From contig OZ059894.1 in the NCBI GenBank assembly GCA_964057225.1, positions 11,160,001 through 11,224,000 of the forward strand: DNA of 64,000 nucleotides. Reading direction: 5' to 3'. Positions within the stretch are counted from its first letter, which is position 1, and every line of letters starts with the position of its first letter. A program made the translations under genes and the position numbers. Of the stretch, positions 1 through 52,092 are shown one piece after another. Below the pieces are notes generated by a model, which was not told the origin of the DNA, did no database searches, and saw only the letters and a list, made by a program, of their open reading frames with translations. This stretch comes from Auanema rhodensis (lineage: Eukaryota; Animalia; Nematoda).

Positions 1-1
1 A

Positions 2-6761: not shown

Positions 6762-6764
6762 ATT

Positions 6765-8350: not shown

Positions 8351-8628
8351 TTAAACTATAAAAGTAACAAAAGCGTAGAGGCAGCAAAGACATGAATAAA
8401 CATAAATGTAAATACAGAATTACCAGGTAGTACATAAGTATGACAAAAAATTATAAGAAAGCCATGAAAATAGAAGGTTTGTGAACAAATGAGAGGTACA
8501 TCTTTGATCGTATAGTCATTTCTAAACCGTTCGTATGCTGCAGCATCGTCATAAGCGTCACTCAAGTTGAATTTCCATGTGTACTACACGATTTTCATTC
8601 TTATTGTTACATTCTTTCCCTGAGGGAA

Positions 8629-23804: not shown

Positions 23805-23862
<58 letters not shown>

Positions 23863-25938: not shown

Positions 25939-26000
<62 letters not shown>

Positions 26001-29652: not shown

Positions 29653-30742
29653 TGGGCCGTTCCCGCCAGCAGTGCAAGAGCGGGTCGACCCGTGAGGTGG
29701 AGCTAGCAAGCCAGCATCTACCTCAAGTCTCAAAAATCGGTTAACCTTATTGTGAACCAATGGAACACATATCGAAGGTTAATTCGATAAGAACGATTTA
29801 TTGAAGTAGGAAATGTTTTGCCCCGTAGGACTACAAGTAAATATTATCTAGCACAAGGCTATTAGAGAATGATAAGATACTACCTGCACTAAGTGCGTCG
29901 CATCGTAAAGGGAAAAAAAATTAAACAATGGGAGTTTAACAGCATGAAATTGAGAGAAAAGACATATCCGAGTGTGAATAAAATTACGGGTGAACGGAAC
30001 ATGGAGTACGAGAGACATACAAAACGAGACTAAGTGAAAAGAAAAAGTCTTGTATCACGTTCATGAAGGTTCGACGGATCCGGTAAGAAGCTGCGGGTTC
30101 AGAAGGTCAGCTTTCATCTCGTAGTCGTGGCGCATCAGGAATTTGTGAAGCTTTCCGGCTTTGCAGACGGCTGTATTGGTCCTCGTAGGATGGTGGAAGA
30201 TGTTGTCGCTTAGTGATGTTACACATAAAGATATGCAAAAATAGAACAATTCAAAGAAAAAGAGCACAATTAAAACGAGATTTGGAGAGAAGAGAAGTCT
30301 TATATCACTTTCGATGGTTCGGAAGCTCCAGTCTGCTGCTGCGGTTTAGGGGGTGCAACTGGCATGTCGGAGGCGTAGCACATCATAGGTCAAGCTTGCT
30401 GGACTCCCGGCTCGGCTGGTGGCTGTGAGTTTTCCTTGTGCTTGTTCTCGGTGGTGGTCCCTGGGCTGTCTCTTCACCAAAAATTACTATACTAATTGCA
30501 CATTTCATTTAAACGACCCATTTCAGAAGCTTTAAGAGGAAAAGCTACAATTAGCATAGGACCGCCTCAAGGCCTGGTGGATCATTCAATTTAGTTTCAA
30601 TCGCCAAGTATAGCGGCCTGGGCCCTTGGGTCAATTCACTGAACCAGTGTAGTATCGATTGTTCAATGGAACACATATCGAAGGTTAATTCGATAAGAAC
30701 GATTACTACACTTTGATCTTAGCCAAAAGGCCGAGAAGCGAT
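29653..30742 (-). pseudogene. U2: U2 interrupted by non-autonomous element A (U2 39-end 29653-29798; U2 1-79 30664-30742)
   Basis: Junctions read directly. Confidence 0.92.
29799..30663 (-). mobile_element. Non-autonomous U2-specific element, family A (865 bp)
   Basis: Inserted at U2 nt 39, U2 39-79 present on both sides, no RT, 3' end AACATT..TTCAATAA like the autonomous element. Confidence 0.88.
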
Positions 30743-31184
30743 ACAGCATAGCCATGAGTATCAAAGACATCAAGCAAATGTATCGTACTTGTTACGAGTG
30801 CACTCTCTCATTTGAATATAAAAGTGTGGTTTGACAATCTTGACTGTACAGGTCATAAATGGCTCATATAAACTGTGGATTTACTCAACTTTTGGACTTA
30901 TTTTTTTCTTATTCGAAGCGCTGCACTTTTTTCTATTCTTTTTATTCAAATACTTGTATATAGTTTTATATGTACGGTTGCAAAGTTTCCGAATATTTTA
31001 TATATTTTTATACAATAATTAGGAGAAGGTTAATACAATGAAATCTCCCAACTTTACAGTGTTTGTATTGCTTACAGTATCTAGAACAACCACTCTTGTA
31101 ATATTAGAGCACATATCAATCAACAACTTTTTCTAGTTATCAAAGCTTTTTTATTTCTTCAAGATATTTCAAATAAAATATAAA

Positions 31185-31303
31185 AGCTTACGACACCCGG
31201 GATTCCCAAGCCGTCTCCGATCCAAGTACTAACCGGGCCCAACGTTGCTTGACTTGCCAGATCGGACGGGATGGCGTACTTTCAACGTGGTATGGTCGTA
31301 AGC
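31185..31303 (-). rRNA. 5S rRNA
   Basis: Same sequence as the first copy. Confidence 0.97.
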
Positions 31304-31544
31304 AATGTTATATTCTTCATTATCAGTTATATCACTCTAAATCTTGTTGTTAATAGTTAGGACCACAAAGAAAACAACAGGAACAGTAACAAATGAAATG
31401 CCCAAACTTTACAGTGTTCGAGTTATTTACAGTATCTAAGACTACCTCTGTCGTGTTATTAGAGCAAACATTCGATTAACAACAACTTTTTTTTAGTTAT
31501 CAAAGCTTTTTTATTTCTTCAAAAAATTTCAAATAAAATATAAA

Positions 31545-31663
31545 AGCTTACGACACCCGGGATTCCCAAGCCGTCTCCGATCCAAGTACTAACCGGGCCC
31601 AACGTTGCTTGACTTGCCAGATCGGACGGGATGGCGTACTTTCAACGTGGTATGGTCGTAAGC
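31545..31663 (-). rRNA. 5S rRNA
   Basis: Same sequence as the first copy. Confidence 0.97.
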
Positions 31664-31820
31664 AATGTCATATTCTTCATTATCAGTTATATCACTCTAA
31701 ATCTTGTTGTTAATAGATACGACCACAAAGAAAACAACAGGAACAGTAACAATAACAAAAAAAATTTTTTTTTCACCTATGTGTCTAAAGGTTAGCCATG
31801 TATCCGTTTATATATATATA

Positions 31821-33370
31821 CACTGTGGTGCAAAATATAGTAACCTCTTGAAAAAAATCTAAATTTTTTTAATATCAATATTTTTCTGAACAATGTTCAC
31901 AAATAAATAATAAACACTTCTACATGTGTCAAACCATAAATAAAGCAAGGTGTCAACGCATGTCATAAAAAAGATATATGAACAAAACCTTTTTTTCAGC
32001 GATCATTACTATCATCAAAAAAAACTTTAAAATAATTTTTTTTGCTTTCAACTTAATTTTTTGAATATTTTTGCTAATTCTTGAAATTTATTCAGGCTTT
32101 ACCTGAATAATGCCCGGAACCAGAGACTTGTCAGTTGCTGAGAAAGCTCAAATCCACGCCTTTTCTGTCGCGGGTTGGAGCCATCGAGCAATTGCCGAAA
32201 ATCTGGGCCGTGCACGAAGCACGGTGACCCGCTTCTTATCAGAAGGTAGCGTCAATTCAAGACGTTCAAATTGTGGTAGGAAGCCTGTTTTGAATGACAG
32301 GGATAAGAGGCGAATTATACGTTTAGCGTCTAATTCTACTAACAGTTGTAGTACTATTGCAGGCAAACTGCATTTAAACGTATCGAGATGGACGGTACGC
32401 AAGGTTCTGTCACAAGCGACAACCATAAAGAGAGCTAAAATGAGAAAAGCCCCGTTTTTGACCCCTGTTCATAAGAGAAATAGGGTCCTTTTTGCCGAAG
32501 AGAATGAGGAGCGAGAGTGGACAAAAGTAAACAGAAAATAAAAAACGTAGATTTTAATTTCTTTGTTCTAGGTGATATTTTCTGATGAAAAGAAGTTTAA
32601 CCTCGATGGTCCTGACGGAGTCCATCATTATTGGAGGGACCTTCGTAAGGAGCCGAGGTACTTCTCAAAACGTACCGCTGGAGGAGGTTCAGTTATGGTT
32701 TGGGCTGCATTTTCCTCAACGGGAAAGTTGCAGATCCAATTCACAACGAACACGCTAAACTCCGAGGACTATCAGGCTATCCTACAAGATAGTCTGATTC
32801 CTTATATCAACAATTATCCTGGTGAAAATTTGATTTTTCAACAAGATAATGCCCCCATCCATGCCAGTAGGTCCACAAAAACATGGCTGGATGAACATAA
32901 TATTAGTGTTTTGAAATGGCCTTCCAATTCCCCTGATCTAAACCCTATAGAAAATCTATGGGGTATTCTTGTTAAAAAGCTGTACGAAGATGGAAGACAG
33001 TATGAAAATACTAGACAACTTCGGACAGCGATTTTAAATGCATGGGACCTCTTATCAATTGAAACCTGTTCAAATTTGGCATCAAGCATGCCAAGACGTT
33101 TAGCTCAGGTAATTGAAAACAATGGAGGTCCTACTTCATATTAAAATTGTGTTTTTTAAATTTTTTGTTTAACTTCATTTTTGCCCAAAAGTTGTAAAAA
33201 AAATATTTTCACTTTTTCTCACATCCACATTGTTAATTAATATTCCTCTCAATAATAAAATGTTTGTTAATTTAAAAGCTTCTAAACAATACAAAAAGAT
33301 TTGGAACAAAACATCATTTGAAAAAAAAAAAAGTTAAAATAAAGAGGTTACAATATTTTGCACCACAGTA
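31821..33370 (+). mobile_element. Tc1/mariner (Tc3-like, DD34E) DNA transposon in the (TA)n tract
   Basis: About 29-bp TIRs (C/T)ACTGTGGTGCAAAATAT(A/T)GTAACCTCTT, with TA on both sides. Confidence 0.95.
32110..33144 (+). CDS. Tc3-like transposase, 329 aa, exons 32110-32526 and 32572-33144
   Basis: A 45-nt GT..AG intron joins WTK to VIFSDEKKFNLDGPDG. QQDNA and SPDLNPIEN give D-34-E spacing. N-terminal HTH region. Confidence 0.93.
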
Positions 33371-34732: not shown

Positions 34733-37700
34733 ATGGTTTATTGAATAACTAATGTTATGATACAATAACTAACCAATAAGAAAGAGCCCAGAACCGGGGA
34801 GACGGTCTTACCAGTACAACTTCAAACAGCAAGTGATTAAAAAGTACATAATAAGACAGATTACCAACAGGGGCTAAAACAACTCAAGAGTCGGGGGAGT
34901 GGGTTAAAAAAGTAATGAATAACAAAAAAAAAAATGAATACTAAAGCAGAACAATGAAAATTAAATATCAAGTACCGCTATGATCAGACAATTTGAGTGC
35001 CTACGGCAATGGTGTTAAAAATAAACAACAAAATACATGTACCAATGAAGGTCAGAAAGAAAGAAAAAAAGACAAAAATAAGTAATACAAAAAGTAAATA
35101 CATTACAATCGAATCACAAACAAGTCAATGGATAATTTCTTCTTCATACTGGCTTACACCAGAAACATGTTCCACGTAGATATTCCTGGCCCACTTGATG
35201 GTATCGGCGACGACGAGCTTCTCCATTAGCCGGTTGTAGTGGCTGCTGATCTTGAGTGATCGAAGGGCTTGTCCGTTGAGCGGGTCCATAGTTCCAAGCA
35301 TTCCTACGACATACGCTTCTACACTAGTCTTATAACCAAGACATTGGTATTGGCTGGCTATGTCAGCATATTTCCTCTCCTTTATCATACGCGCGGCTAT
35401 CATGGCTTGTCGGCGGTTTTCATAGCTCACTGTAACATCAACGATACTACAGTGTTTTGCGTCATGATTGACCACTACTATGTCAGGTCGGAGTGTACTA
35501 TTAATGCCAGGAAGAGGCTGGTTAGTGTAAACTTCTCCGTTTTTAGGCTCTGGCAGTGCTTTGATAAGACGGTCCACGATGTTGTTGTGGCGGAGTTGGA
35601 TTGCTCTCGTGTGAGAGTGGCAGTGTCCAAGAACATGTGCAGCAGTTTCGTTGGAGTAACTACACCTGCGGCACTGTTTGTTTCCTTCTCCGTGTCTTCT
35701 ACAGCCATTGAGCTGGAGAGTATTGAGTCGAGCCTTGTGGATGAATCGCCAATCAGCAAACCGTATGAAATCTCCCTTCGCCATAAAGTGATTGGACGCT
35801 TTGTTGAGCATTGTGACATCAAAGACTTTCCCTTGATCCGGTTTTTGAAGAAGGATCCGAAGGTCTTTCAGCCATAATGCACGTCGCAGGCTTCTGTGGC
35901 ATAGTGAAGGTGTTAACAGTTGGTTGTTTAGATTGAGTTCTAAACCACTTTCGAGGCATGTCCAGTTAGCGTTGATGAGTTTCTTGAGTTGACGCATTGC
36001 TACTCTTACTCTAGTCCAGATGGAGGAAACATCAGATGTTTCGGTGTCGAAAATGCCATCAACGGAACCGTTGTAATATGCAGCTGTCTCATCGTTACTG
36101 GCTTGACGTTTAATCCTTTTTGATGCTACTTTTTTTGAGTCTTGATGCGCAATATCAGCTACTACAAGATCAGATGACTTCAAAAGTTGGTAGGCATGAG
36201 TGACTTCACAGACGTCTGACAGGTGTTGGAGTCGAGAGAGACCAAGTCCGCCGTAGTTAGTTGGCAGGTAGATTGGTTCAGCACTGGCGTTTGGAGGATA
36301 GTGCATCCATCTACGGGCACAACGTTTGAGTTCTTTGTCAAAGGCGACTAGTTTACTCTTTGGGACGTGGCCATTCGTCATATGAAAATTAAGGCAGGGC
36401 ATCAGGAAGGTGCGTACTGCGTCAGCTTTCTGCCATTCAGCAAGTAAGGATTTGTCAATTTTTTCCAAGTGTTGACTCATAATATTCACTGTTGGAACCG
36501 CAGACTTATGTAAATGCATTCCAGTAGGGATTCCCAAGTGGGAGTAGCTGTCAAATTTGCTAAGAGCGGGTAGAGAGCAGCTCTGAAGCATGTATGAAGC
36601 TGTTGATATTTTCCCTTTGTCGATCGTCAAAGTGGCGCATTTCGCTGGTTTGAAGGTTAAGCCTGTGAAATTAGCCGCATTTGATGCTGCGTCCAACATT
36701 TTCTGTAGATCTTCTGATGATGAGGAGACCAGGGCAAGGTCATCGGCGTACGCTAGCACAGCGATGTTGTGGTTGTGTAGCTTATAGCCTGTAGAAGTTT
36801 CCAAGATGGTTTTAATTAGAGGTTCAATGGCAAGGTTGAACAGGATTGGAGATAGTGGGGATCCTTGTAACACACCTGCGTGAACTGGGATGGTCGAAGT
36901 GAGTCCGGATCCTGTCTGGATTCTTGTAGAGGCATCTGTGTATAGAGCTCGTACTCGGGATATTGAGGCTTCAGCCATTCCTGACCATCTTAGAACGTCT
37001 AGCAGAGTTTCGTGTGGCAGCGATCCAAAAGCGTTTGCGAGATCAAGCCAAGCAATTGCAATTTTCTCACGTTTACGTTTAGCGTCTGCAATGGTACTTT
37101 GCAACAAAAAGTTGTGTTCCATGCATCCAGCTTTGGCCACAAAGCCCTTTTGGGAGGGAGAAAGTCTTTTTTCTGCTCTTGCCCATGTTAGCAGTCGATG
37201 CGTAAGACAAGCTGAGTACGTCTTACCAATTGTGCACGAAAGTGCTATTGGTCGCCAGTTGTTAATGTCAGCTTTATCACCTTTCTTATGGATGAGGACG
37301 GTGGTCGACTCTTTCCAGGAAAAAGGGATGTGTCCTAGCTTGTGTACGGTGTTAAAAATCGCTGCTAATATGTGACCTCCTTGGTCAAATTTCTTCCAGT
37401 GCGAGTATCGAAGTCCATCAGCTCCTGGAGCCGTATCGCTGCAACGTCGTATGCGTTCCCAGACTTCCAAAGGGGTGAAAACACCTTCTAATGGGTCGGT
37501 ACTAGCTGGCAAATCCGGTCTGGTGACTGTGATGGGGAGGGCTGGGCCTTGACTGCTGTGAACAGAAAGGAAGTGTTTTTCAACCTCTGCAGATGGTATG
37601 GTGCAGGTTTCACTTTGTTCTCCGAGCAGTTGTCGAAAGGCTTTCTTCTTGTTGGCCCTCCAAAGCTTCTGGAGCTTCATCGCCTGGGTTTTTTGGTCTT

Positions 37701-38455
37701 CCTCAGGTTGTGTGTGTGGTCGGCGCCTTTGTCGGAAGTTGGGAACTTTGATCATAATGTCAAGAGACTTTCTGATTGTGTCTACCAACTCTTCCAGGAC
37801 CTGCTCGAGCTCACTTTCGCATACTACCTTTTTAATTCTATCCACCCAAATATTTTCAGAGTTTCTATTCGGATCAGGGTCGGCAAAAGATGGTTCTGTA
37901 CTCGGAACCCTGATCTCGTTGAATATTTCACTCTCTCGCGGAAGGGGGGAAACTTCGGCCTCTGGGGACAAGTCCAGAATTGGGGCCTCAAACAAGCGTA
38001 CCGTTGATGGAGATCCTTGTTCCTGTCCACTGGATGATGTTTCCTCCATTGTACGCTCCTCCACGGGCGAGGTGGTCGTCCTTGTGCCTGGTGGGCGGGT
38101 GTTCCTGATCCTTCGCAATATAGGGCGGGAACTGGGCTCTCTCGGAGATAGAGGTGAGATCACCACAGTTTCCTCTATGATGCGGAGGCATCCTTCAGCT
38201 TTTTTCTGATGGCTTTTAACGGCCTTCAGATTGCTGGTGAGGCCACAGGCACGGCACTCAAATTCTACTCCGACCTCATGTTCTCTCCGAAGATGGCGGA
38301 CGAGACCATTGTGGTCTGAGTAGGATCGCGGAATAGGAGCGCAGATTGAACAAGAAAAAGGGCTCTGAAGAGGCACCTTTAACTTGTAAAGCCCTTGCTC
38401 CATCTCTAGCAGATCTAAAGACTTACGTAGTACAGTTGCAATATCGATTTAGCCA
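34733..38455 (-). mobile_element. Utopia-like element, full length, variant subfamily
   Basis: Same structure; several amino-acid and 3' UTR differences from the major type. Confidence 0.95.
35125..38403 (-). CDS. ZnF-RT-RLE polyprotein (1092 aa)
   Basis: Motifs as in 16320-19598. Confidence 0.96.
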   Translation of the reverse strand: MEQGLYKLKVPLQSPFSCSICAPIPRSYSDHNGLVRHLRREHEVGVEFECRACGLTSNLKAVKSHQKKAEGCLRIIEETVVISPLSPREPSSRPILRRIRNTRPPGTRTTTSPVEERTMEETSSSGQEQGSPSTVRLFEAPILDLSPEAEVSPLPRESEIFNEIRVPSTEPSFADPDPNRNSENIWVDRIKKVVCESELEQVLEELVDTIRKSLDIMIKVPNFRQRRRPHTQPEEDQKTQAMKLQKLWRANKKKAFRQLLGEQSETCTIPSAEVEKHFLSVHSSQGPALPITVTRPDLPASTDPLEGVFTPLEVWERIRRCSDTAPGADGLRYSHWKKFDQGGHILAAIFNTVHKLGHIPFSWKESTTVLIHKKGDKADINNWRPIALSCTIGKTYSACLTHRLLTWARAEKRLSPSQKGFVAKAGCMEHNFLLQSTIADAKRKREKIAIAWLDLANAFGSLPHETLLDVLRWSGMAEASISRVRALYTDASTRIQTGSGLTSTIPVHAGVLQGSPLSPILFNLAIEPLIKTILETSTGYKLHNHNIAVLAYADDLALVSSSSEDLQKMLDAASNAANFTGLTFKPAKCATLTIDKGKISTASYMLQSCSLPALSKFDSYSHLGIPTGMHLHKSAVPTVNIMSQHLEKIDKSLLAEWQKADAVRTFLMPCLNFHMTNGHVPKSKLVAFDKELKRCARRWMHYPPNASAEPIYLPTNYGGLGLSRLQHLSDVCEVTHAYQLLKSSDLVVADIAHQDSKKVASKRIKRQASNDETAAYYNGSVDGIFDTETSDVSSIWTRVRVAMRQLKKLINANWTCLESGLELNLNNQLLTPSLCHRSLRRALWLKDLRILLQKPDQGKVFDVTMLNKASNHFMAKGDFIRFADWRFIHKARLNTLQLNGCRRHGEGNKQCRRCSYSNETAAHVLGHCHSHTRAIQLRHNNIVDRLIKALPEPKNGEVYTNQPLPGINSTLRPDIVVVNHDAKHCSIVDVTVSYENRRQAMIAARMIKERKYADIASQYQCLGYKTSVEAYVVGMLGTMDPLNGQALRSLKISSHYNRLMEKLVVADTIKWARNIYVEHVSGVSQYEEEIIH

Positions 38456-38513
38456 TTAACCTTATTGTGAACCAATGGAACACATATCGAAGGTTAATTC
38501 GATAAGAACGATT

Positions 38514-39297
38514 TATTGAAGTAGATAATGTTTGTCCCGGAGGACTACAATTTTAAAATAATTACTGAAGCCGTTAGGCAGCGAGAAAATAGTAAGGATA
38601 CTATCCGCACTGAGTGCGTCGTATCATGAAAAAAAAAAAGAGAATGTAAAGAAGGTAGAGCATAGACTTAGATAATGACATCACTAGTTGTAGATTTGTG
38701 GCATATGCAGCTGCGGGTATGAGGATCAGCATGAACAGATTAAATTTACATGAACAAAGTGGGAACATTTCGAGGAACTTAGGGAACGGAGTAATGCGAT
38801 TATTTTCAAAAATAGAATTACCTATCTGTAGCTACGGATAAAGAGGAATAGCTTTGAATAGATGGAAATTTACATGAAAATATGTGACATTATGAAACAG
38901 CACAATAGATAATGAGACTACGGAAAAAATAGTATCCTTTTGCGTTCTTGATGGATCTGCGGCTCCCGTCATTGGCTGCGGTTTCGGTGCTCAGCTGGCT
39001 AGTCGTCGGCGTTGGACATCGTGGATCGTAATGAGGTTTTCCATAGATTCCGGCTCGGCTGGTTCTGTGTGCGTTCTTCTCCGTTGTCGTGGTGGTGTTC
39101 TTCTCGGCTTTTTCCTTCTCCAAAATTTAACTATACTGAAGGTAGAGCTTTGTTTCACAATTGCTACCAAGAGTGAAGAACATTAGCTACTACCAACAGC
39201 ATAGGACCGCCTCAAGGCCTGGTAGATCAATCAGTGTTGCTTCAATCACCAAGTATTGCGGCCTAGGCCCTTGGATCAATTCACAACACCAGTATAG
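38514..39297 (-). mobile_element. Non-autonomous U2-specific element, family B (784 bp)
   Basis: Same insertion site and U2-79 5' junction as family A; shares 5' and 3' blocks with A but has a divergent middle. Confidence 0.86.
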
Positions 39298-39339
39298 CAA
39301 TGGAACACATATCGAAGGTTAATTCGATAAGAACGATTA

Positions 39340-42300
39340 ATGGTTTATTGAATAACTAATGTTATGAAACAATAAATAACCAATAAAAAAGAGCCCAGAA
39401 TCGGGGAGACGGTATTACCAGTACAACTTAAAACAGCAAGTGATTAAAAAGTACAAAATAAAACACATTACCAACAGAGGCTAAAACGACTCAAGAGTCG
39501 GGGGAGTGGGTTAAAAAAAGTAATGAATAACAAAAAAAATGAATAATAAAGCAGAACAGTGAAAAGTAAATATCAAGTGCCGCTATGATCAAACAATTTG
39601 AGTGCCTACGGCAATGGTGTTAAAAATAAACAACAAAATACATGTACCAATGAAGGTCAGAAAGAGAGAAAGAAAAAAGACAAAAATAAGTAATACAAAA
39701 AGTAAAAAATATATTACAATCAAATCACAAACAAGTCAATGGATAATTTCTTCTTCATACTGCCTTACACCAGAAACATGTTCCACGTAGATATTCCTGG
39801 CCCACTTGATGGTATCGGCGACGACGAGCTTCTCCATTAGCCGGTTGTAGTGGCTGCTGATCTTGAGTGATCGGAGGGCTTGTACGTTGAGCGGGTCCAT
39901 AGTTCCAAGCATTCCTACGACATACGCTTCTACACTAGTCTTATAACCAAGACATTGGTATTGGCTGGCTATGTCAGCATATTTCCTCTCCTTTATCATA
40001 CGCGCGGCTATCATGGCTTGTCGGCGGTTTTCATAGCTCACTGTAACATCAACGATACTACAGTGTTTTGCGTCATGATCGACCACTACTATGTCAGGTC
40101 GGAGTGTACTATTAATGCCAGGAAGAGGCTGGTTAGTGTAAACTTCTCCGTTTTTAGGCTCTGGCAGGGCTTTGATAAGACGGTCCACGATGTTGTTGTG
40201 GCGGAGTTGGATTGCTCTCGTGTGAAAGTGGCAGTGTCCAAGAACATGTGCAGCAGTTTCGTTGGGGTAACTACACCTGCGGCACTGTTTGTTTCCTTCT
40301 CCGTGTCTTCTACAGCCATTGAGCTGGAGAGTATTAAGTCGAGCCTTGTGGATGAATCGCCAATCAGCAAACCGTATGAAATCTCCCTTCGCCATAAAGT
40401 GATTGGACGCTTTGTTGAGCATTGTGACATCAAAGACTTTCCCTTGATCCGGTTTTTGAAGAAGGATCCGAAGGTCTTTCAGCCATAATGCACGTCGCAG
40501 GCTTCTGTGGCATAGTGAAGGTGTTAACAGTTGGTTGTTTAGATTGAGTTCTAAACCACTTTCGAGGCATGTCCAGTTAGCGTTGATGAGTTTCTTGAGT
40601 TGACGCATCGCTACTCTTACTCTAGTCCAGATGGAGGAAACATCAGATGTTTCGGTGTCGAAAATGCCATCAACGGAACCGTTGTAATATGCAGCTGTCT
40701 CATCGTTACTGGCTTGACGTTTAATCCTTTTTGATGCTACTTTTATTGAGTCTTGATGCGCAATATCAGCTACTACAAGATCAGATGACTTCAAAAGTTG
40801 GTAGGCATGAGTGACTTCACAGACGTCTGACAGGTGTTGGAGTCGAGAGAGACCAAGTCCGCCGTAGTTGGTTGGCAGGTAGATTGGTTCAGCACTGGCG
40901 TTTGGAGGATAGTGCATCCATCTACGGGCACAGCGTTTGAGTTCTTTGTCAAAGGCGACTAGTTTACTCTTTGGGACGTGGCCATTCGTCATATGAAAAT
41001 TAAGGCAGGGCATCAGGAAGGTGCGTACTGCGTCAGCTTTCTGCCATTCAGCCAGTAAGGATTTGTCAATTTTTTCCAAGTGTTGACTCATGATATTCAC
41101 TGTTGGAACCGCAGACTTATGTAAATGCATTCCAGTAGGGATTCCCAGGTGGGAGTAGCTGTCAAATTTGCTGAGAGCGGGTAGAAAGCAGCTCTGAAGC
41201 ATGTATGAGGCTGTTGATATTTTCCCTTTGTCGATCGTCAAAGTGGCGCATTTCGCTGGTTTGAAGGTCAAGCCTGTGAAATTAGCCGCATTTGATGCTG
41301 CGTCCAACATTTTCTGTAGATCTTCTGATGATGAGGAGACCAGGGCAAGGTCATCGGCGTACGCTAGCACAGCGATGTTGTGATTGTGTAGCTTATAGCC
41401 TGTAGAGGTTTCCAAGATGGTTTTAATTAGAGGTTCAATGGCAAGGTTGAACAGGATCGGAGATAGTGGGGATCCTTGTAACACACCTGCGTGAACTGGA
41501 ATGGTCGAAGTGAGTCCGGAGCCTGTCTGGATTCTTGTAGAGGCATCTGTGTATAGAGCTCGTACTCGGGATATTGAGGCTTCAGCCATTCCTGACCATC
41601 TTAGAACGTCTAGCAGAGTTTCGTGTGGCAGCGATCCAAAAGCGTTTGCGAGATCAAGCCAAGCAATTGCAATTTTCTCACGTTTACGTTTAGCGTCTGC
41701 AATGGTACTTTGCAACAAAAAGTTGTGTTCCATGCATCCAGCTTTGGCCACAAAGCCCTTTTGGGAGGGAGAAAGTCTTTTTTCTGCTCTTGCCCATGTT
41801 AGCAGTCGATGCGTAAGACAAGCTGAGTACGTCTTACCAATTGTGCACGAAAGTGCTATTGGTCGCCAGTTGTTAATGTCAGCTTTATCACCTTTCTTAT
41901 GGATGAGGACGGTGGTCGACTCTTTCCAGGAAAAAGGGATGTGTCCTAGCTTGTGTACGGTGTTAAATATCGCTGCTAATATGTGACCTCCTTGGTCAAA
42001 TTTCTTCCAGTGCGAGTATCGAAGTCCATCAGCTCCTGGAGCCGTATCGCTGCAACGTCGTATGCGTTCCCAGACTTCCAAAGGGGTGAAAACACCTTCT
42101 AATGGGTCGGTACTAGTTGGCAAATCCGGTCTGGTGACTGTGATGGGGAGGGCTGGGCCTTGACTGCTGTGAACAGAAAGGAAGTGTTTTTCAACATCTG
42201 CAGATGGTATGGTGCAGGTTTCACTTTGTTCTCCGAGCAGTTGTCGAAAGGCTTTCTTCTTGTTGGCCCTCCAAAGCTTCTGGATCTTCATCGCCTGGGT

Positions 42301-43066
42301 TTTTTGGTCTTCCTCAGGTTGTGTGTGTGGTCGGCGCCTTTGTCGGAAGTTGGGAACTTTGATCATAATGTCAAGAGACTTTCTGATTGTGTCTACCAAC
42401 TCTTCCAGGACCTGCTCGAGCTCACTTTTGCACACTACCTTTTTAATTCTATCCACCCAAATATTTTCAGAGTTTCTATTCGGATCAGGGTCGGCAAAAG
42501 ATGGTTCTGTACTCGGAACCCTGATCTCGTTGAATATTTCACTCTCTCGCGGAAGGGGGGAAACTTCGGCCTCTGGGGACAAGTCCAGAATTGGGGCCTC
42601 AAATAAGCGTACCGTTGATGGAGATCCTTGTTCCTGTCCACTGGATGATGTTTCCTCCATTGTACGCTCCTCCACGGGCGGGGTGGTCGTCCTTGTGCCT
42701 GGTGGGCGGGTGTTCCTGATCCTCCGCAATATAGGGCGGGAACTGGGCTCTCTCGGAGATAGAGGTGAGATCACCACAGTTTCCTCTATGATGCGGAGGC
42801 ATCCTTCAGCTTTTTTCTGATGGCTTTTAACGGCCTTCAGATTGTTGGTGAGGCCACAGGCACGGCACTCAAATTCTACTCCGACCTCATGTTCTCTCCG
42901 AAGATGGCGGACGAGACCATTGTGGTCTGAGTAGGATCGCGGAATAGGAGCGCAGATTGAACAAGAAAAAGGGCTCTGAAGAGGCACCTTTAGCTTGTAA
43001 AGCCCTTGCTCCATCTCTAGCAGATCTAAAGACTTACGTAGTACAGTTGCAATATCGATTTAGCCA
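39340..43066 (-). mobile_element. Utopia-like element, full length
   Basis: Same structure as 15924-19650. Confidence 0.95.
39736..43014 (-). CDS. ZnF-RT-RLE polyprotein (1092 aa)
   Basis: Motifs as in 16320-19598. Confidence 0.96.
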   Translation of the reverse strand: MEQGLYKLKVPLQSPFSCSICAPIPRSYSDHNGLVRHLRREHEVGVEFECRACGLTNNLKAVKSHQKKAEGCLRIIEETVVISPLSPREPSSRPILRRIRNTRPPGTRTTTPPVEERTMEETSSSGQEQGSPSTVRLFEAPILDLSPEAEVSPLPRESEIFNEIRVPSTEPSFADPDPNRNSENIWVDRIKKVVCKSELEQVLEELVDTIRKSLDIMIKVPNFRQRRRPHTQPEEDQKTQAMKIQKLWRANKKKAFRQLLGEQSETCTIPSADVEKHFLSVHSSQGPALPITVTRPDLPTSTDPLEGVFTPLEVWERIRRCSDTAPGADGLRYSHWKKFDQGGHILAAIFNTVHKLGHIPFSWKESTTVLIHKKGDKADINNWRPIALSCTIGKTYSACLTHRLLTWARAEKRLSPSQKGFVAKAGCMEHNFLLQSTIADAKRKREKIAIAWLDLANAFGSLPHETLLDVLRWSGMAEASISRVRALYTDASTRIQTGSGLTSTIPVHAGVLQGSPLSPILFNLAIEPLIKTILETSTGYKLHNHNIAVLAYADDLALVSSSSEDLQKMLDAASNAANFTGLTFKPAKCATLTIDKGKISTASYMLQSCFLPALSKFDSYSHLGIPTGMHLHKSAVPTVNIMSQHLEKIDKSLLAEWQKADAVRTFLMPCLNFHMTNGHVPKSKLVAFDKELKRCARRWMHYPPNASAEPIYLPTNYGGLGLSRLQHLSDVCEVTHAYQLLKSSDLVVADIAHQDSIKVASKRIKRQASNDETAAYYNGSVDGIFDTETSDVSSIWTRVRVAMRQLKKLINANWTCLESGLELNLNNQLLTPSLCHRSLRRALWLKDLRILLQKPDQGKVFDVTMLNKASNHFMAKGDFIRFADWRFIHKARLNTLQLNGCRRHGEGNKQCRRCSYPNETAAHVLGHCHFHTRAIQLRHNNIVDRLIKALPEPKNGEVYTNQPLPGINSTLRPDIVVVDHDAKHCSIVDVTVSYENRRQAMIAARMIKERKYADIASQYQCLGYKTSVEAYVVGMLGTMDPLNVQALRSLKISSHYNRLMEKLVVADTIKWARNIYVEHVSGVRQYEEEIIH

Positions 43067-43476
43067 TTAACCTTATTGTGAACCAATGGAACACATATCG
43101 AAGGTTAATTCGATAAGAACGATTACTACACTTTGATCTTAGCCAAAAGGCCGAGAAGCGATTGACGTAGAGAATGTTTGTTCCGAAAAACTACAATATT
43201 AAACTATAAAAGTAACAAAAGCGTAGAGGCAGCAAAGACATGAATAAACATAAATGTAAATACAGAATTACCAGGTAGTACATAAGTATGACAAAAAATT
43301 ATAAGAAAGCCATGAAAATAGAAGGTTTGTGAACAAATGAGAGGTACATCTTTGATCGTATAGTCATTTCTAAACCGTTCGTATGCTGCAGCATCGTCAT
43401 AAGCGTCACTCAAGTTGAATTTCCATGTGTACTACACGATTTTCATTCTTATTGTTACATTCTTTCCCTGAGGGAA

Positions 43477-44565
43477 TGGGCCGTTCCCGCCAGCAGTGCA
43501 AGAGCGGGTCGACCCGTGAGGTGGAGCTAGCAAGCCAGCATCTACCTCAAGTCTCAAAAATCGGTTAACCTTATTGTGAACCAATGGAACACATATCGAA
43601 GGTTAATTCGATAAGAACGATTTATTGAAGTAGGAAATGTTTTGCCCCGTAGGACTACAAGTAAATATTATCTAGCACAAGGCTATTAGAGAATGATAAG
43701 ATACTACCTGCACTAAGTGCGTCGCATCGTAAAGGGAAAAAAATTAAACAATGGGAGTTTAACAGCATGAAATTGAGAGAAAAGACATATCCGAGTGTGA
43801 ATAAAATTACGGGTGAACGGAACATGGAGTACGAGAGACATACAAAACGAGACTAAGTGAAAAGAAAAAGTCTTGTATCACGTTCATGAAGGTTCGACGG
43901 ATCCGGTAAGAAGCTGCGGGTTCAGAAGGTCAGCTTTCATCTCGTAGTCGTGGCGCATCAGGAATTTGTGAAGCTTTCCGGCTTTGCAGACGGCTGTATT
44001 GGTCCTCGTAGGATGGTGGAAGATGTTGTCGCTTAGTGATGTTACACATAAAGATATGCAAAAATAGAACAATTCAAAGAAAAAGAGCACAATTAAAACG
44101 AGATTTGGAGAGAAGAGAAGTCTTATATCACTTTCGATGGTTCGGAAGCTCCAGTCTGCTGCTGCGGTTTAGGGGGTGCAACTGGCATGTCGGAGGCGTA
44201 GCACATCATAGGTCAAGCTTGCTGGACTCCCGGCTCGGCTGGTGGCTGTGAGTTTTCCTTGTGCTTGTTCTCGGTGGTGGTCCCTGGGCTGTCTCTTCAC
44301 CAAAAATTACTATACTAATTGCACATTTCATTTAAACGACCCATTTCAGAAGCTTTAAGAGGAAAAGCTACAATTAGCATAGGACCGCCTCAAGGCCTGG
44401 TGGATCATTCAATTTAGTTTCAATCGCCAAGTATAGCGGCCTGGGCCCTTGGGTCAATTCACTGAACCAGTGTAGTATCGATTGTTCAATGGAACACATA
44501 TCGAAGGTTAATTCGATAAGAACGATTACTACACTTTGATCTTAGCCAAAAGGCCGAGAAGCGAT
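43477..44565 (-). pseudogene. U2: U2 interrupted by family A element
   Basis: U2 39-end 43477-43622; U2 1-79 44487-44565. Confidence 0.92.
43623..44486 (-). mobile_element. Non-autonomous element family A (864 bp)
   Basis: Matches 29799-30663 apart from an A-run length. Confidence 0.88.
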
Positions 44566-45007
44566 ACAGCATAGCCATGAGTATCAAAGACATCAAGCAA
44601 ATGTATCGTACTTGTTACGAGTGCACTCTCTCATTTGAATATAAAAGTGTGGTTTGACAATCTTGACTGTACAGGTCATAAATGGCTCATATAAACTGTG
44701 GATTTACTCAACTTTTGGACTTATTTTTTTCTTATTCGAAGCGCTGCACTTTTTTCTATTCTTTTTATTCAAATACTTGTATATAGTTTTATATGTACGG
44801 TTGCAAAGTTTCCGAATATTTTATATATTTTTATACAATAATTAGGAGAAGGTTAATACAATGAAATCTCCCAACTTTACAGTGTTTGTATTGCTTACAG
44901 TATCTAGAACAACCACTCTTGTAATATTAGAGCACATATCAATCAACAACTTTTTCTAGTTATCAAAGCTTTTTTATTTCTTCAAGATATTTCAAATAAA
45001 ATATAAA

Positions 45008-45126
45008 AGCTTACGACACCCGGGATTCCCAAGCCGTCTCCGATCCAAGTACTAACCGGGCCCAACGTTGCTTGACTTGCCAGATCGGACGGGATGGCGT
45101 ACTTTCAACGTGGTATGGTCGTAAGC
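45008..45126 (-). rRNA. 5S rRNA
   Basis: Same sequence as the first copy. Confidence 0.97.
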
Positions 45127-45367
45127 AATGTTATATTCTTCATTATCAGTTATATCACTCTAAATCTTGTTGTTAATAGTTAGGACCACAAAGAAAACAA
45201 CAGGAACAGTAACAAATGAAATGCCCAAACTTTACAGTGTTCGAGTTATTTACAGTATCTAAGACTACCTCTGTCGTGTTATTAGAGCAAACATTCGATT
45301 AACAACAACTTTTTTTTAGTTATCAAAGCTTTTTTATTTCTTCAAAAAATTTCAAATAAAATATAAA

Positions 45368-45486
45368 AGCTTACGACACCCGGGATTCCCAAGCCGTCTC
45401 CGATCCAAGTACTAACCGGGCCCAACGTTGCTTGACTTGCCAGATCGGACGGGATGGCGTACTTTCAACGTGGTATGGTCGTAAGC
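45368..45486 (-). rRNA. 5S rRNA
   Basis: Same sequence as the first copy. Confidence 0.97.
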
Positions 45487-46978
45487 AATGTCATATTCTT
45501 CATTATCAGTTATATCACTCTAAATCTTGTTGTTAATAGATACGACCACAAAGAAAACAACAGGAACAGTAACAATAACAAAAAAAATTTTTTTTTCACC
45601 TATGTGTCTAAAGGTTAGCCATGTATCCGTTTATATATATATATATATCAACAGTAAAAAGTCCAATCAAGAGAGAAATTTTTTCAACACATAGTTGTTT
45701 TTTTTTTAAATATCATTGTTTTTCCTCATAACTCGGTTTAAACTCGTTCTAACCCGTTGAAATACGTCTAGAAAGTCTTTATAACATGCATATGTATGAT
45801 AGAACTTCATATTTATTGTAATAGAAAATTTTATTTTCAGACGTCTTGGTTAACAATGATATGTTTTACCCCCTTATAATTTTTATCATAATGTTCCTTA
45901 TACGGAACGCTCAATGAAACTTGCTTCCAGAAAAATTTCTTTCTATTTTTTCTTCATATGTACGTAGATACTATAGAGAACTATGATAGAAAACTTTAAC
46001 ATTCACGAAATCATCATTTCTCATTACGCTACGGAGGTTTAAAAAGCTGTGTTTTACCTTATAATAGACCGGAAAACCCTTGTGTTAAAACTGGACCGTT
46101 TTTACACATATAAAAATGTCCCGTATTCGGGACCCTAATGTAACTTTTGATTCCCTATATTTTTTTTCATGAAATTTACAATCTACTGTAGAAAGAAGAA
46201 TTATTTTTATAAAAACTGTAAATTTTTGAAAAATGAAAACAAAACGAAAACAAAAACAACTTTTTTTTGAACATTTTCTCACACAAGGGTCCCCCCTTAC
46301 CTACTTTTTTTCTCATTACTCGTTTCAACCTCATCCGATCACTCTGCAAACATGTTTAATCGTTCTAACTTGTTGAAATACGTCTTAAAAGTCTAAACAA
46401 CATGCATATGCATAATAGAAACCACCCGAATAGGCCCCCACGCACTAAACGAGATATATACATTACCAGTATAGTAATAGAACACATATTGAAGATTAAT
46501 TCGATAAGAACAATTTATTGACGTAGAGAATGTTTGTTCCGAAAAACTACAATATTAAACTATAAAAGTAACAAAAGCGTAGAGGCAGCAAAGACATGAA
46601 TAAACATAAATGTAAATACAGAATTACCAGGTAGTACATAAGTATGACAAAAAATTATAAGAAAGCCATGAAAATAGAAGGTTTGTGAACAAATGAGAGG
46701 TACATCTTTGATCGTATAGTCATTTCTAAACCGTTCGTATGCTGCAGCATCGTCATAAGCGTCACTCAAGTTGAATTTCCATGTGTACTACACGATTTTC
46801 ATTCTTATTGTTACATTCTTTCCCTGAGGGAATGGGCCGTTCCCGCCAGCAGTGCAAGAGCGGGTCGACCCGTGAGGTGGAGCTAGCAAGCCAGCATCTA
46901 CCTCAAGTCTCAAAAATCGGTTAACCTTATTGTGAACCAATGGAACACATATCGAAGGTTAATTCGATAAGAACGATT

Positions 46979-47842
46979 TATTGAAGTAGGAAATGTTTTG
47001 CCCCGTAGGACTACAAGTAAATATTATCTAGCACAAGGCTATTAGAGAATGATAAGATACTACCTGCACTAAGTGCGTCGCATCGTAAAGGGAAAAAAAT
47101 TAAACAATGGGAGTTTAACAGCATGAAATTGAGAGAAAAGACATATCCGAGTGTGAATAAAATTACGGGTGAACGGAACATGGAGTACGAGAGACATACA
47201 AAACGAGACTAAGTGAAAAGAAAAAGTCTTGTATCACGTTCATGAAGGTTCGACGGATCCGGTAAGAAGCTGCGGGTTCAGAAGGTCAGCTTTCATCTCG
47301 TAGTCGTGGCGCATCAGGAATTTGTGAAGCTTTCCGGCTTTGCAGACGGCTGTATTGGTCCTCGTAGGATGGTGGAAGATGTTGTCGCTTAGTGATGTTA
47401 CACATAAAGATATGCAAAAATAGAACAATTCAAAGAAAAAGAGCACAATTAAAACGAGATTTGGAGAGAAGAGAAGTCTTATATCACTTTCGATGGTTCG
47501 GAAGCTCCAGTCTGCTGCTGCGGTTTAGGGGGTGCAACTGGCATGTCGGAGGCGTAGCACATCATAGGTCAAGCTTGCTGGACTCCCGGCTCGGCTGGTG
47601 GCTGTGAGTTTTCCTTGTGCTTGTTCTCGGTGGTGGTCCCTGGGCTGTCTCTTCACCAAAAATTACTATACTAATTGCACATTTCATTTAAACGACCCAT
47701 TTCAGAAGCTTTAAGAGGAAAAGCTACAATTAGCATAGGACCGCCTCAAGGCCTGGTGGATCATTCAATTTAGTTTCAATCGCCAAGTATAGCGGCCTGG
47801 GCCCTTGGGTCAATTCACTGAACCAGTGTAGTATCGATTGTT
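46979..47842 (-). mobile_element. Non-autonomous element family A (864 bp)
   Basis: Matches the other A copies. Confidence 0.88.
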
Positions 47843-47884
47843 CAATGGAACACATATCGAAGGTTAATTCGATAAGAACGATTA

Positions 47885-51593: not shown

Positions 51594-52092
51594 TTAACCT
51601 TATTGTGAACCAATGGAACACATATCGAAGGTTAATTCGATAAGAACGATTACTACACTTTGATCTTAGCCAAAAGGCCGAGAAGCGATATCGTACTTGT
51701 TACGAGTGCACTCTCTCATTTGAATATAAAAGTGTGGTTTGACAATCTTGACTGTACAGGTCATAAATGGCTCATATAAACTGTGGATTTACTCAACTTT
51801 TGGACTTATTTTTTTCTTATTCGAAGCGCTGCACTTTTTTCTATTCTTTTTATTCAAATACTTGTATATAGTTTTATATGTACGGTTGCAAAGTTTCCGA
51901 ATATTTTATATATTTTTATACAATAATTAGGAGAAGGTTAATACAATGAAATCTCCCAACTTTACAGTGTTTGTATTGCTTACAGTATCTAGAACAACCA
52001 CTCTTGTAATATTAGAGCACATATCAATCAACAACTTTTTCTAGTTATCAAAGCTTTTTTATTTCTTCAAGATATTTCAAATAAAATATAAA

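What the first reader, a model, noticed from the sequence alone, without database searches (positions are those of the whole stretch)
29799..47842. Non-autonomous, U2-site-specific retroelements (families A and B) apparently parasitising Utopia machinery and the U2 promoter
Seen: three copies of an ~865-bp element (29799, 43623, 46979) and one 784-bp relative (38514) sit at the same U2 site as the autonomous element and in the same orientation. They encode no RT or endonuclease, have U2 1-79 upstream and U2 39-end downstream, and end AACATT(N6)TTCAATAA, like the autonomous AACATTAGTTATTCAATAA. They are not deletion derivatives of the Utopia in this window, because their bodies do not match it. 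I see no tRNA or 5S head. Established: R2 has non-autonomous SIDE partners in 28S rDNA that use host co-transcription. Inference: this is an equivalent SINE-like system for U2, driven by the snRNA promoter. I do not know of a described example, but could not search.
Basis: partly seen in the sequence, partly recalled or inferred. Interest (0 to 1): 0.92.

Follow-up and report, generated by a model that had tools for sequence, protein, structure and literature searches.

The report
Non-coding hitchhiker retroelements in U2 genes
Two related families of short, protein-less mobile elements sit at exactly the spot in U2 snRNA genes where the Utopia retrotransposon inserts; they most likely borrow Utopia's enzyme and the U2 gene's own promoter, a pairing not described in the literature I could search.

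Summary
The window is a tandem U2 snRNA + 5S rRNA array on the minus strand. Only 4 of about 13 U2 genes are intact. Three near-identical 864/865-bp elements (A) and one 784-bp relative (B) lie at U2 nt 38/39, in U2 orientation. This is the same site used by seven copies of a 3.7-kb Utopia element, five of them full length with an intact 1092-aa ORF. A and B have no ORF, no tRNA/5S/7SL head and no known ribozyme, and their bodies match no Utopia sequence. A and B are conserved only at their ends: 83.5% over the 5' 109 nt, about 36% in the middle, 85% over the last 33 nt. Their tail motif recurs only at Utopia ends and at a fossil A/B-like copy embedded in every array unit. New evidence bears on the promoter idea. 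Two Utopia copies carry their U2 1-96 leader fused exactly at U2 +1 to foreign upstream DNA, so the Utopia RNA starts at the U2 transcription start. A, B and the fossil all share a U2 ..79 leader boundary. Unproven: mobilisation by this particular Utopia, chimeric U2-A/B RNA, and whether the three A copies are separate insertions or array duplicates. No relatives were found outside the window. Verdict: a real, probably new variant of the R2-SIDE type of system.

The parts
29799..30663 (-). A copy 1 (865 bp), non-coding element at U2 nt 38/39
43623..44486 (-). A copy 2 (864 bp), identical to copy 3
46979..47842 (-). A copy 3 (864 bp), lying downstream of Utopia I6 with U2 38-79 between them
38514..39297 (-). 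B (784 bp), diverged relative of A, lying between Utopia I5 and Utopia I4
30664..30742 (-). U2 nt 1-79 leader upstream of A1, with the normal U2 upstream region beyond it. The same arrangement is at 44487-44565 for A2.
47843..47884 (-). U2 nt 38-79 between the Utopia I6 tail and A3. The equivalent segment at 39298-39339 lies between I5 and B.
29647..29798 (-). U2 nt 39-190 downstream of A1. Also 43471-43622 for A2 and 46827-46978 for A3. B is followed by U2 39-96 at 38456-38513.
30544..30652 (-). Conserved 5' block of A (A nt 12-120), 83.5% identical to B nt 1-109 at 39189-39297. An open frame is present in both but shows no coding signature.
29799..29848 (-). A 3' tail: a 4-bp hairpin followed by the AACATT-N6-TTCAATA terminus. 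The B equivalent is 38514-38562.
39340..43066 (-). Full-length Utopia I5 (3727 bp). Other full copies: 15924-19650, 34733-38455, 47885-51593, 56930-60656. 5'-truncated copies: 19710-23062 and 11596-13410. A partial copy on the + strand is at 63398-64000.
39736..43014 (-). Utopia ORF, 1092 aa: R2-like reverse transcriptase plus a C-terminal zinc knuckle and restriction-like endonuclease region
43067..43162 (-). U2 1-96 leader of I5, fused at U2 +1 (2-nt microhomology) to the fossil tail of the preceding unit instead of to the U2 promoter
51594..51689 (-). U2 1-96 leader of I6, fused at U2 +1 to unit position 2100. The 38 bp that normally precede U2 +1 are missing.
8257..8386 (-). Fossil present in every array unit (12 copies; this is one example). 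It consists of about 75 nt of B-like 3' tail, a U2-like nt 39-79 segment (5 transitions in 41 nt) and about 14 nt of B-like 5' head.

Best explanation
A and B are two diverged families of non-coding, non-autonomous retroelements, and a third, fossil lineage also exists. They live only in the Utopia target site of U2 snRNA genes.

Proposed cycle:
1. The element sits downstream of U2 nt 1-79 and is transcribed from the external U2 snRNA promoter as a chimeric RNA, U2(1-79)-element (inferred).
2. A Utopia-type RT/restriction-like-endonuclease protein made by the neighbouring autonomous copies recognises the short 3' tail (small hairpin, AACATT, TTCAATA). It nicks another U2 gene at nt 38/39 and reverse-transcribes the RNA by target-primed reverse transcription (inferred from shared site, orientation and tail).
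3. The cDNA ends with the complement of the U2 leader. This anneals to the target's own U2 5' part and primes second-strand synthesis.
4. That step regenerates U2 1-79 in front of the new copy, places it behind a live promoter, and creates the apparent 41-bp duplication of U2 39-79 (inferred by analogy with R2 elements whose RNA keeps upstream 28S sequence).

Shown here: the anatomy, the end-only conservation, the exclusivity of the motif, and that the resident Utopia RNA carries a U2 leader starting at +1.

Not shown: trans-mobilisation, the chimeric A/B RNA, and current activity.
For: 1. A and B use the same site (U2 38/39) and orientation as seven Utopia copies.
2. They are non-coding. There is no conserved ORF. 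The open frame in the 5' block has differences at codon positions 5/9/4, with 2 synonymous against 12 non-synonymous codons. There are no protein matches.
3. The A-B identity profile is 83.5% (5' 109 nt), 54%, 36% and 68%, with 85% over the last 33 nt. Constraint is therefore on the termini only.
4. The tail motif is found only at Utopia, A, B and fossil ends: 22 hits against 0.04 expected. The 4-bp tail hairpin is kept in A, B and the fossil, with one double change.
5. A partner is present and alive. All five full copies have intact 1092-aa ORFs. I4 differs from the others by 20-22 synonymous and 12-13 non-synonymous changes. The protein is an R2-like RT plus endonuclease.
6. Evidence that the leader travels with the RNA:
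   - All full Utopia copies have a U2-96 boundary, whereas 5'-truncated copies end at U2 87 and U2 39.
   - I5 and I6 leaders are fused at U2 +1 (within 0-2 nt of microhomology) to non-promoter DNA.
   - I6 and I5 carry U2 80-96 although the U2 segment they adjoin ends at 79 before A3 or B.
7. A, B and the fossil share the U2-79 boundary despite deep divergence.
8. T8-T11 runs about 110 nt before the 3' end would stop Pol III before the tail. No tRNA, 5S or 7SL head is present.
9. R2 precedent: RNAs that retain upstream host sequence give uniform 5' junctions (PMC3774820), and non-autonomous R2 SIDEs exist (PMC3414825).
Against: - The tail shared with the resident Utopia is short (about 19 positions), has a 1-nt register shift, and Utopia has 5-6 extra terminal nt. 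General alignment of the last 60 nt is only marginal against shuffles (9-15 of 300).
- The conserved 5' block has no counterpart in Utopia and no exceptional predicted stability.
- The three A copies cannot be told apart from array duplicates, because flanks carry no informative SNPs.
- The composite arrangements could also arise by crossing-over within the 42-59 bp U2 homologies.
- Efficient synthesis of 1-4 kb RNAs from an snRNA-type promoter is not established for this host, which is itself unidentified.
- No copies outside this window could be examined.
Confidence: 0.6

Rival explanations
1. A and B are UTR-only (SIDE-type) derivatives of, and are mobilised by, a second Utopia family that is not in this window and that ends in TTCAATA and begins with the conserved 5' block. 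The resident Utopia is only a neighbour.
For: The A/B/fossil tail ends 5-6 nt earlier than the resident Utopia tail, with a 1-nt different spacing. The 5' block is absent from the resident Utopia. The leader boundary is 79, not 96. Multiple Utopia families coexist in single U2 arrays in Phytophthora (PMC4640811) and in the scorpion locus L015.
Against: No such family occurs in 64 kb holding seven Utopia insertions. There is no trace of decayed Utopia coding sequence in A or B. The fossil shows that the A/B-type tail has been in this array for a long time without an autonomous copy of that type nearby.
Confidence: 0.2
2. A and B are retroelement relics that no longer transpose. Their present copies, the three A copies in particular, were spread only by unequal crossing-over and duplication of array units. 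The composite sites arose by recombination within U2 homologies.
For: Array units are about 99.9% identical. A copies differ by at most one homopolymer base, no more than their flanks differ. A1 and A2 have the same upstream layout, with two 5S genes at the same distances.
Against: This does not explain the end-only conservation between A and B. It does not explain why three diverged lineages share the site and leader boundary, nor why B lies within the leader of I4 and under I5 in an order consistent with serial insertion. This rival concerns present activity, not origin, and is compatible with the main explanation for the past.
Confidence: 0.12
3. A and B are transcribed from a promoter of their own located in the conserved 5' block, not from the U2 promoter. 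The U2 39-79 repeat is a true target-site duplication made by staggered cleavage.
For: The 109-nt 5' block is the most conserved part and its function is unknown. In the scorpion locus, different Utopia families all have a U2 39-about-60 spacer, which looks enzyme-determined. Reptile Utopias make 20-bp duplications (PMC4640811).
Against: Rfam and ARAGORN detect no Pol III-type head, and T-runs would terminate Pol III before the tail. A true staggered cut by one enzyme would not give 79 for A/B, 96 for Utopia, 87 for I1 and 39 for I3. The I5 and I6 junctions at U2 +1 show that leaders are carried on the RNA, at least for Utopia.
Confidence: 0.08

Closest known systems
R2 SIDEs (short internally deleted elements) of Drosophila, Eickbush & Eickbush 2012 (PMC3414825)
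   Same: Non-coding, non-autonomous elements at the exact target site of a site-specific RLE-type non-LTR retrotransposon inside a tandemly repeated RNA gene. They rely on host-gene co-transcription and on the autonomous element's protein through a shared 3' end.
   Different: SIDEs are plain internal deletions of R2 (5' ribozyme plus a long R2 or R1 3' UTR) and are co-transcribed by Pol I. A and B share only about 19 tail positions with the resident Utopia. Their 5' block and body are unrelated to it. No HDV-like or other ribozyme was found. The host gene is a Pol II snRNA gene.
Utopia, U2-targeting non-LTR retrotransposons, Kojima & Jurka 2015 (PMC4640811)
   Same: The 3.7-kb element here is a Utopia: an R2-like RT plus restriction-like endonuclease, inserted so that U2 resumes at nt 38/39, with tandem insertions in U2 arrays. 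A and B use the same site and orientation.
   Different: That paper reports no non-autonomous partner. It leaves the 5' junction and duplication unexplained for some lineages and does not address transcription. Here the leader is shown to begin at U2 +1.
R2 elements whose ribozyme cleaves upstream in 28S, Eickbush et al. 2013 (PMC3774820)
   Same: Host-gene sequence retained at the RNA 5' end is proposed to anneal to the target and prime second-strand synthesis. This gives uniform 5' junctions for full-length copies and variable junctions for truncated ones, which is the pattern seen here.
   Different: There the 5' end is made by a self-cleaving ribozyme in a Pol I transcript. Here the 5' end coincides with the U2 transcription start. 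The retained leader also runs past the insertion site, so it produces a 41- or 58/59-bp apparent duplication.
SINEU, SINEs with U1/U2-derived heads, Kojima 2015 (PMC4494074)
   Same: Non-autonomous retroelements whose 5' part is U2 sequence.
   Different: SINEU copies are dispersed in crocodilian genomes, with tails and target preferences linked to other LINE clades (SINEU-3 with Tx1). They are not inserted in U2 genes. Their U2 head is a fixed part of the element, whereas here the leader is rebuilt on a live U2 gene.
Keno (Tx1 clade), U2-specific non-LTR retrotransposon
   Same: Same U2 target position (PMC4640811).
   Different: Keno has an AP-type endonuclease and is autonomous, with no relation to the A/B tail. 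It was not seen in this window.

Membership tests
Non-autonomous partner of a site-specific non-LTR retrotransposon (general class) | No reverse transcriptase or endonuclease coding capacity | tested here: met
   Longest sense ORFs are 56-77 aa and are not conserved between A and B. There is no tblastn hit above chance to 121 Utopia/R2-like proteins. The 5' open frame shows no coding signature.
Non-autonomous partner of a site-specific non-LTR retrotransposon (general class) | Same target site and orientation as the autonomous element | tested here: met
   All four copies are followed by U2 from nt 39. Utopia copies are followed by U2 from nt 38/39. All are co-oriented with U2.
Non-autonomous partner of a site-specific non-LTR retrotransposon (general class) | 3' end shared with the autonomous partner | tested here: inconclusive
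   The ATTGT...AACATT...TTCAATA motif is shared and occurs only at element ends. It has a 1-nt register shift, Utopia carries 5-6 extra terminal nt, and the unanchored alignment is only marginally better than shuffles.
Non-autonomous partner of a site-specific non-LTR retrotransposon (general class) | Several independent insertions | tested here: inconclusive
   Three lineages (A, B, fossil) at the same kind of site argue for at least three events. The three A copies cannot be separated from array duplication. No data are available outside the window.
Non-autonomous partner of a site-specific non-LTR retrotransposon (general class) | Mobilised in trans by the partner's protein | not testable with these tools
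   This needs a target-primed reverse transcription assay or a retrotransposition assay.
SIDE (short internally deleted element) | Both ends are co-linear with, and clearly derived from, a full-length autonomous element | tested here: not met
   For the resident Utopia, there is no similarity at the 5' end or in the body, and only about 19 positions match at the tail. A parent elsewhere in the genome cannot be excluded.
SINE in the strict sense | Head derived from tRNA, 7SL or 5S RNA with an internal Pol III promoter | tested here: not met
   No Rfam hit at E up to 10 on the sense strand. ARAGORN finds no tRNA. T8-T11 runs lie upstream of the tail.
Retroelement with an HDV-like 5' ribozyme (R2, R2 SIDE, RTE, L1Tc) | Nested double-pseudoknot fold at the 5' junction | tested here: not met
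   A loose descriptor scan of leader plus 420 nt gave 1 hit for A, 17 for B and 8 for Utopia, against 7.5-12 in shuffles. No candidate was shared by A and B. Rfam finds none. The descriptor was home-made, so a deviant ribozyme is not excluded.
Utopia (applies to the 3.7-kb element, not to A/B) | Single ORF with RT and a C-terminal zinc knuckle plus restriction-like endonuclease; 3' junction at U2 nt 38/39 | tested here: met
   RVT_1 at E = 5e-28. The protein aligns with R2 proteins through the RT and the C-terminal CCHC/PD-D/E-K region. Nearest relatives are uncharacterised RT proteins of nematodes and arthropods. The scorpion relative P0004 lies in a chain of RT elements separated by U2 segments. 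Junctions are shown.

The most novel reading that the evidence does not exclude
This may be the first non-autonomous retroelement system that is both site-specific for an snRNA gene and driven by an external Pol II snRNA promoter. Under this reading, A and B, like their Utopia helper, are transcribed from U2 +1 with a U2 leader. That leader templates the 5' junction, so each new copy is automatically rebuilt behind a live U2 promoter. A/B would then define the minimal cis-acting RNA for Utopia-type integration: a roughly 110-nt 5' block plus a 35-125-nt tail.
Probability: 0.45. Interest if true: 0.78.

Novelty: new variant of a known kind. Interest (0 to 1): 0.66.

Why it matters
Site-specific RLE retrotransposons (R2 and its relatives, Utopia among them) are being screened as tools for writing DNA into safe genomic sites (PMC13580325). 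What their proteins need in the template RNA is a central question for that work. A natural, protein-less passenger that keeps only its two ends conserved would point directly at those requirements for the Utopia lineage.

The U2 +1 junctions also give the first sequence-level evidence I know of for how a Utopia is transcribed and how its 5' junction and long apparent target duplication arise. Kojima & Jurka (2015) left that point open.

The system also bears on how parasites and hyper-parasites persist in a small multigene family. Here only 4 of about 13 U2 genes in 64 kb remain intact.

Tried and rejected
- Coding capacity: ORF listing, tblastn with 121 Utopia/R2-like proteins and a codon-position test of the 5' open frame found no coding signal.
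- Known RNA families: Rfam at gathering threshold and at E up to 10 on small slices, plus ARAGORN, found nothing on the sense strand.
- HDV-like ribozyme: the home-made descriptor scan gave nothing above shuffles and nothing shared by A and B.
- Predicted structure: RNAalifold on two sequences gave a long hairpin in the 5' block with zero compensatory pairs. Single-sequence z-scores were unremarkable, +0.5 to -2.4. The 4-bp tail hairpin is kept in A, B and the fossil, but three sequences carry no statistical weight (165 of 500 shuffles).
- Leader/block or 5'/3' RNA-RNA pairing by duplexfold: over-extended duplexes with marginal or no signal, not used.
- Relatives elsewhere: the 22-nt core of the 5' block had 0 hits in metagenome contigs. 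A tail-plus-U2 pattern gave 12 hits, all chance, none near U2. The genome collection offered holds only bacteria and archaea, so it was not used.
- Contigs of the closest Utopia proteins: L001 and L002 (55-56% identity) have no U2 flanks and no A/B-like sequence. L016 (P0012, 40% identity) has no U2.
- Scorpion locus L015: a chain of Utopia copies separated by U2 39-about-60 spacers, but no short non-coding insertion.
- Flank SNPs to separate re-insertion from array duplication: uninformative.
- Host identification from the 7.2-kb flank: no Pfam hits. A literature search for linked U2-5S arrays in nematodes was unhelpful.

Full report
WHAT THE WINDOW IS

Rfam finds 4 complete and many partial U2 snRNA genes and 24 5S rRNA genes, nearly all on the minus strand. 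They form a tandem array with a basic unit of 2138 bp. Each unit holds U2 (190 nt), a spacer, one to three 5S genes, and the U2 upstream region. Units are about 99.9% identical to one another. Mapping the intact U2 (8812 to 8623) back onto the window shows every interruption.

THE AUTONOMOUS ELEMENT

- Five insertions of 3709-3727 bp (I2, I4, I5, I6, I7), two 5'-truncated copies (I1, I3) and a partial inverted copy at the window end belong to one family. They are 97.2-99.97% identical.
- Each full copy has an intact 1092-aa ORF.
- The protein has an RVT_1 domain. It aligns with solved R2 proteins through the RT and through the C-terminal zinc-knuckle and restriction-like endonuclease region.
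- Its closest database relatives are uncharacterised RT proteins of nematodes, a scorpion and other arthropods. The best matches, at 55-56% identity, are on anonymous metagenome contigs.
- With U2 resuming at nt 38/39 after the element, this is a Utopia as defined by Kojima & Jurka (PMC4640811).
- I4 differs from the young group by 20-22 synonymous against 12-13 non-synonymous changes. At least two lineages under purifying selection have therefore inserted here. The machinery looks alive.

THE OBSERVATION

- A2 and A3 are identical. A1 has one extra T in a T-run.
- All are co-oriented with U2 and are followed by U2 from nt 39.
- A1 and A2 are preceded by U2 1-79 and the normal promoter region.
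- A3 and B are preceded by U2 38-79 and then by a full Utopia copy. B is followed by U2 39-96 and another Utopia copy.
- Read in U2 orientation, the composite sites are:
  - U2 1-96 | I6 | U2 38-79 | A3 | U2 39-190
  - U2 1-96 | I5 | U2 38-79 | B | U2 39-96 | I4 | U2 38-190
  - U2 1-39 | I3 | U2 38-96 | I2 | U2 38-190

WHAT A AND B ARE NOT

- Not coding. They have no conserved ORF and no protein-level similarity to 121 Utopia/R2-like proteins.
- Not related to the resident Utopia. There is no nucleotide similarity beyond the terminus.
- Not a known RNA family. There is no tRNA, 5S, 7SL or snRNA head and no Rfam family of any kind on the sense strand.
- No HDV-like fold above the shuffled background, and none shared by A and B.
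- The 36-41-codon open frame across the 5' block is not coding. It exists in both elements, and in A it is in phase with an ATG inside U2 (nt 67-69). The 18 differences fall 5/9/4 on codon positions, 12 of 14 changed codons are non-synonymous, and in B the frame has no ATG.
- T8 (A) and T11 (B) runs about 110 nt before the 3' end would stop Pol III before the tail.

WHAT A AND B ARE

- They are homologous, but only at the ends:
  - 83.5% over the first 109 aligned nt
  - 54% over the next 300 columns
  - 36% (essentially unalignable) over the middle 340 columns
  - 68% over the last 123 columns
  - 85% over the last 33 columns
- Neutral decay in place would be uniform along the element. This profile is what selection on cis-acting termini of a replicating element produces.
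- The tail reads: small hairpin, AACATT, six bases, TTCAATA. The same motif ends the Utopia copies, with five bases instead of six and then 5-6 further bases before U2 resumes.
- The motif occurs 22 times in the window against 0.04 expected, always on the minus strand and always abutting U2 or U2-like sequence.
- All these ends contain an AATAAA hexamer. In A and B it is completed by the first two U2 bases.
- The 4-bp tail hairpin is maintained in A, B and the fossil, with one double and two single pair-preserving changes. Three sequences give no statistical weight.

A FOSSIL IN EVERY UNIT

About 265 nt downstream of each U2 gene the spacer contains three adjoining pieces:
- about 75 nt of B-like tail
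- a U2-like nt 39-79 segment with five transitions in 41 nt
- about 14 nt matching the 5' start of B

This relic, tail | U2 39-79 | head, has the same form as the living I5 | U2 38-79 | B arrangement. It is present in all 12 units. The A/B lineage, its tail and its U2-79 boundary are therefore older than the present homogenised array.

EVIDENCE ON THE PROMOTER QUESTION

1. All five full Utopia copies have U2 up to nt 96 in front. The two truncated copies have U2 up to nt 87 and nt 39. Uniform full-length junctions with variable truncated ones is the pattern described for R2 elements whose RNA retains upstream 28S sequence. In that case the cDNA anneals to the target and primes the second strand (PMC3774820).
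2. In two copies, the DNA in front of the U2 1-96 leader is not the U2 upstream region.
   - For I6, the 38 bp that normally precede U2 +1 are missing.
   - For I5, the leader is joined to the fossil tail of the preceding unit, with loss of unit positions 501-2138.
   - Both breakpoints fall at U2 +1 within 0-2 nt of microhomology.
   - Two unrelated deletions ending at the same base, which is the snRNA start site, are very unlikely by chance.
   - The simple reading is that the cDNA extended to an RNA 5' end at U2 +1 and was end-joined to resected upstream DNA.
   - A template jump onto free U2 snRNA would have added U2 up to nt 190, not nt 96.
3. I6 and I5 carry U2 80-96 even though the U2 segment they adjoin stops at nt 79 before A3 or B. 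If the A/B element was there first, those bases came with the Utopia RNA. Crossing-over within the 42-bp homology is the alternative.
4. The I3 junction at U2 39, and the I5 break 1-3 nt from the fossil's equivalent of the nick site, suggest that the real top-strand break lies close to the nick. The 41-bp and 58/59-bp duplications would then be leader-derived, not products of staggered cleavage.
5. For A and B themselves the evidence is by extension. Three deeply diverged lineages share the same U2-79 boundary, as expected if the leader is an inherited part of the transcript.

WHAT REMAINS UNPROVEN

- Whether the resident Utopia is the helper. The tails are similar but not identical, and the 5' block has no Utopia counterpart. 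An unseen sister family is a fair rival.
- Whether the three A copies are separate insertions. Flanks carry no A-private SNPs, and unequal crossing-over would give the same picture.
- Whether U2-A/B chimeric RNA exists.
- The function of the 5' block. Its predicted hairpin has no compensatory support and no unusual stability. A protein-binding role, like the R2 5' RNA element, is only a guess.
- The host, which was not identified. The protein's relatives suggest an ecdysozoan invertebrate. Resemblance of this U2 to nematode U2 is from my memory only and was not tested.

COMPARISON WITH OTHER GENOMES

- Nothing related to A or B was found in metagenome contigs, or on contigs of the closest Utopia proteins.
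- A 23.6-kb scorpion locus (Centruroides, L015) holds U2 1-about-60 followed by a chain of diverged Utopia copies. Each is separated from the next by U2 39-about-60, and each ends in a CAATAAA-containing tail.
- Chains with short U2 spacers and the AATAAA-type tail are therefore general in this clade. That sample contained no short non-coding passenger.

LITERATURE

- The Utopia paper does not mention non-autonomous partners. Full-text searches for Utopia together with non-autonomous or nonautonomous returned nothing relevant.
- A 2026 review mentions Utopia only as a relative of R2.
- The nearest described systems are R2 SIDEs (PMC3414825) and, more loosely, SINEU (PMC4494074).
- Repbase and Dfam could not be queried, so an unpublished library entry cannot be excluded.

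VERDICT

- A and B are best described as a new variant of the non-autonomous passenger of a site-specific RLE retrotransposon. They fail the defining tests for a SIDE (no co-linear parent found) and for a strict SINE (no Pol III head).
- The added result, that the Utopia template RNA begins at U2 +1 and carries a U2 leader that shapes the 5' junction, is the strongest new point. It makes the promoter-parasitism idea directly testable.

Noticed in passing
window 8257-8386 (-), and the same position in every unit (tails ending at 11132, 15460, 24735, 26873, 29336, 34269, 43163, 46516, 53621, 56466, 61559): Every array unit carries a fossil of a B-like element: about 75 nt of tail, a U2-like nt 39-79 segment and about 14 nt of B-like head. 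All five differences of the U2-like segment from real U2 are C-to-T or G-to-A transitions.
   Followed up: yes
window 43162/43163 and 51689/51690 (-): The U2 1-96 leaders of Utopia I5 and I6 are fused exactly at U2 +1 to non-promoter DNA. For I5 this is the fossil tail of the preceding unit. For I6 it is unit position 2100, with 38 bp lost. These are also the two Utopia copies that sit directly upstream of B and A3.
   Followed up: yes
window 11596-13497 (-): I1 is U2 1-87 (with one mismatch at U2 nt 16) joined to Utopia nt 1895-3727. It is 97.2% identical to most other copies (98.8% to I6). It looks like an internally deleted Utopia that kept the U2 leader and the 3' half, which would be a possible SIDE-type derivative or a later deletion.
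   Followed up: partly
window 31821-33368: A 1548-bp insertion with 27-28-bp terminal inverted repeats starting CACTGTGG lies inside the (TA)n tract of one spacer. It is flanked by TA and is absent from all other units. It is probably a non-autonomous Tc1/mariner-like DNA transposon.
   Followed up: partly
window 61870-64000: There is an inversion breakpoint at 61905/61906 inside U2 (nt 155). Beyond it the array runs on the + strand, with 5S genes at 62381 and 62741 and U2 1-96 plus the start of Utopia from 63302. At 60826, unit position 1241 is joined to 2065, removing the 5S genes of that unit.
   Followed up: partly
window 9255-10092, 54564-55402 and others: The number of 5S genes per unit varies from one to three, as a 360-bp sub-repeat. 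Two adjacent units (23102-27373) share a 7-bp insertion and a variant spacer segment.
   Followed up: no
U2 nt 67-90 within the U2 1-96 leader, e.g. window 43073-43096 (-): The U2 leader contains an ATG that opens a 7-codon upstream ORF ahead of the Utopia start codon. The start codon lies 52 nt after the leader. In A the same ATG runs in frame into the 5' block for 41 codons, with no coding signature.
   Followed up: partly
L015 6143-22510 (Centruroides sculpturatus KZ493963.1): A U2 gene head is followed by a chain of at least four diverged Utopia copies, each separated by U2 nt 39-about-60. Their tails have CAATAAA 9-13 nt before the U2 junction, similar to the tail in this window.
   Followed up: partly
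window 1-7200: In the unique flank outside the array, eight of nine ORFs of at least 70 aa are on the + strand and GC skew is strongly positive. None has a Pfam match.
   Followed up: no
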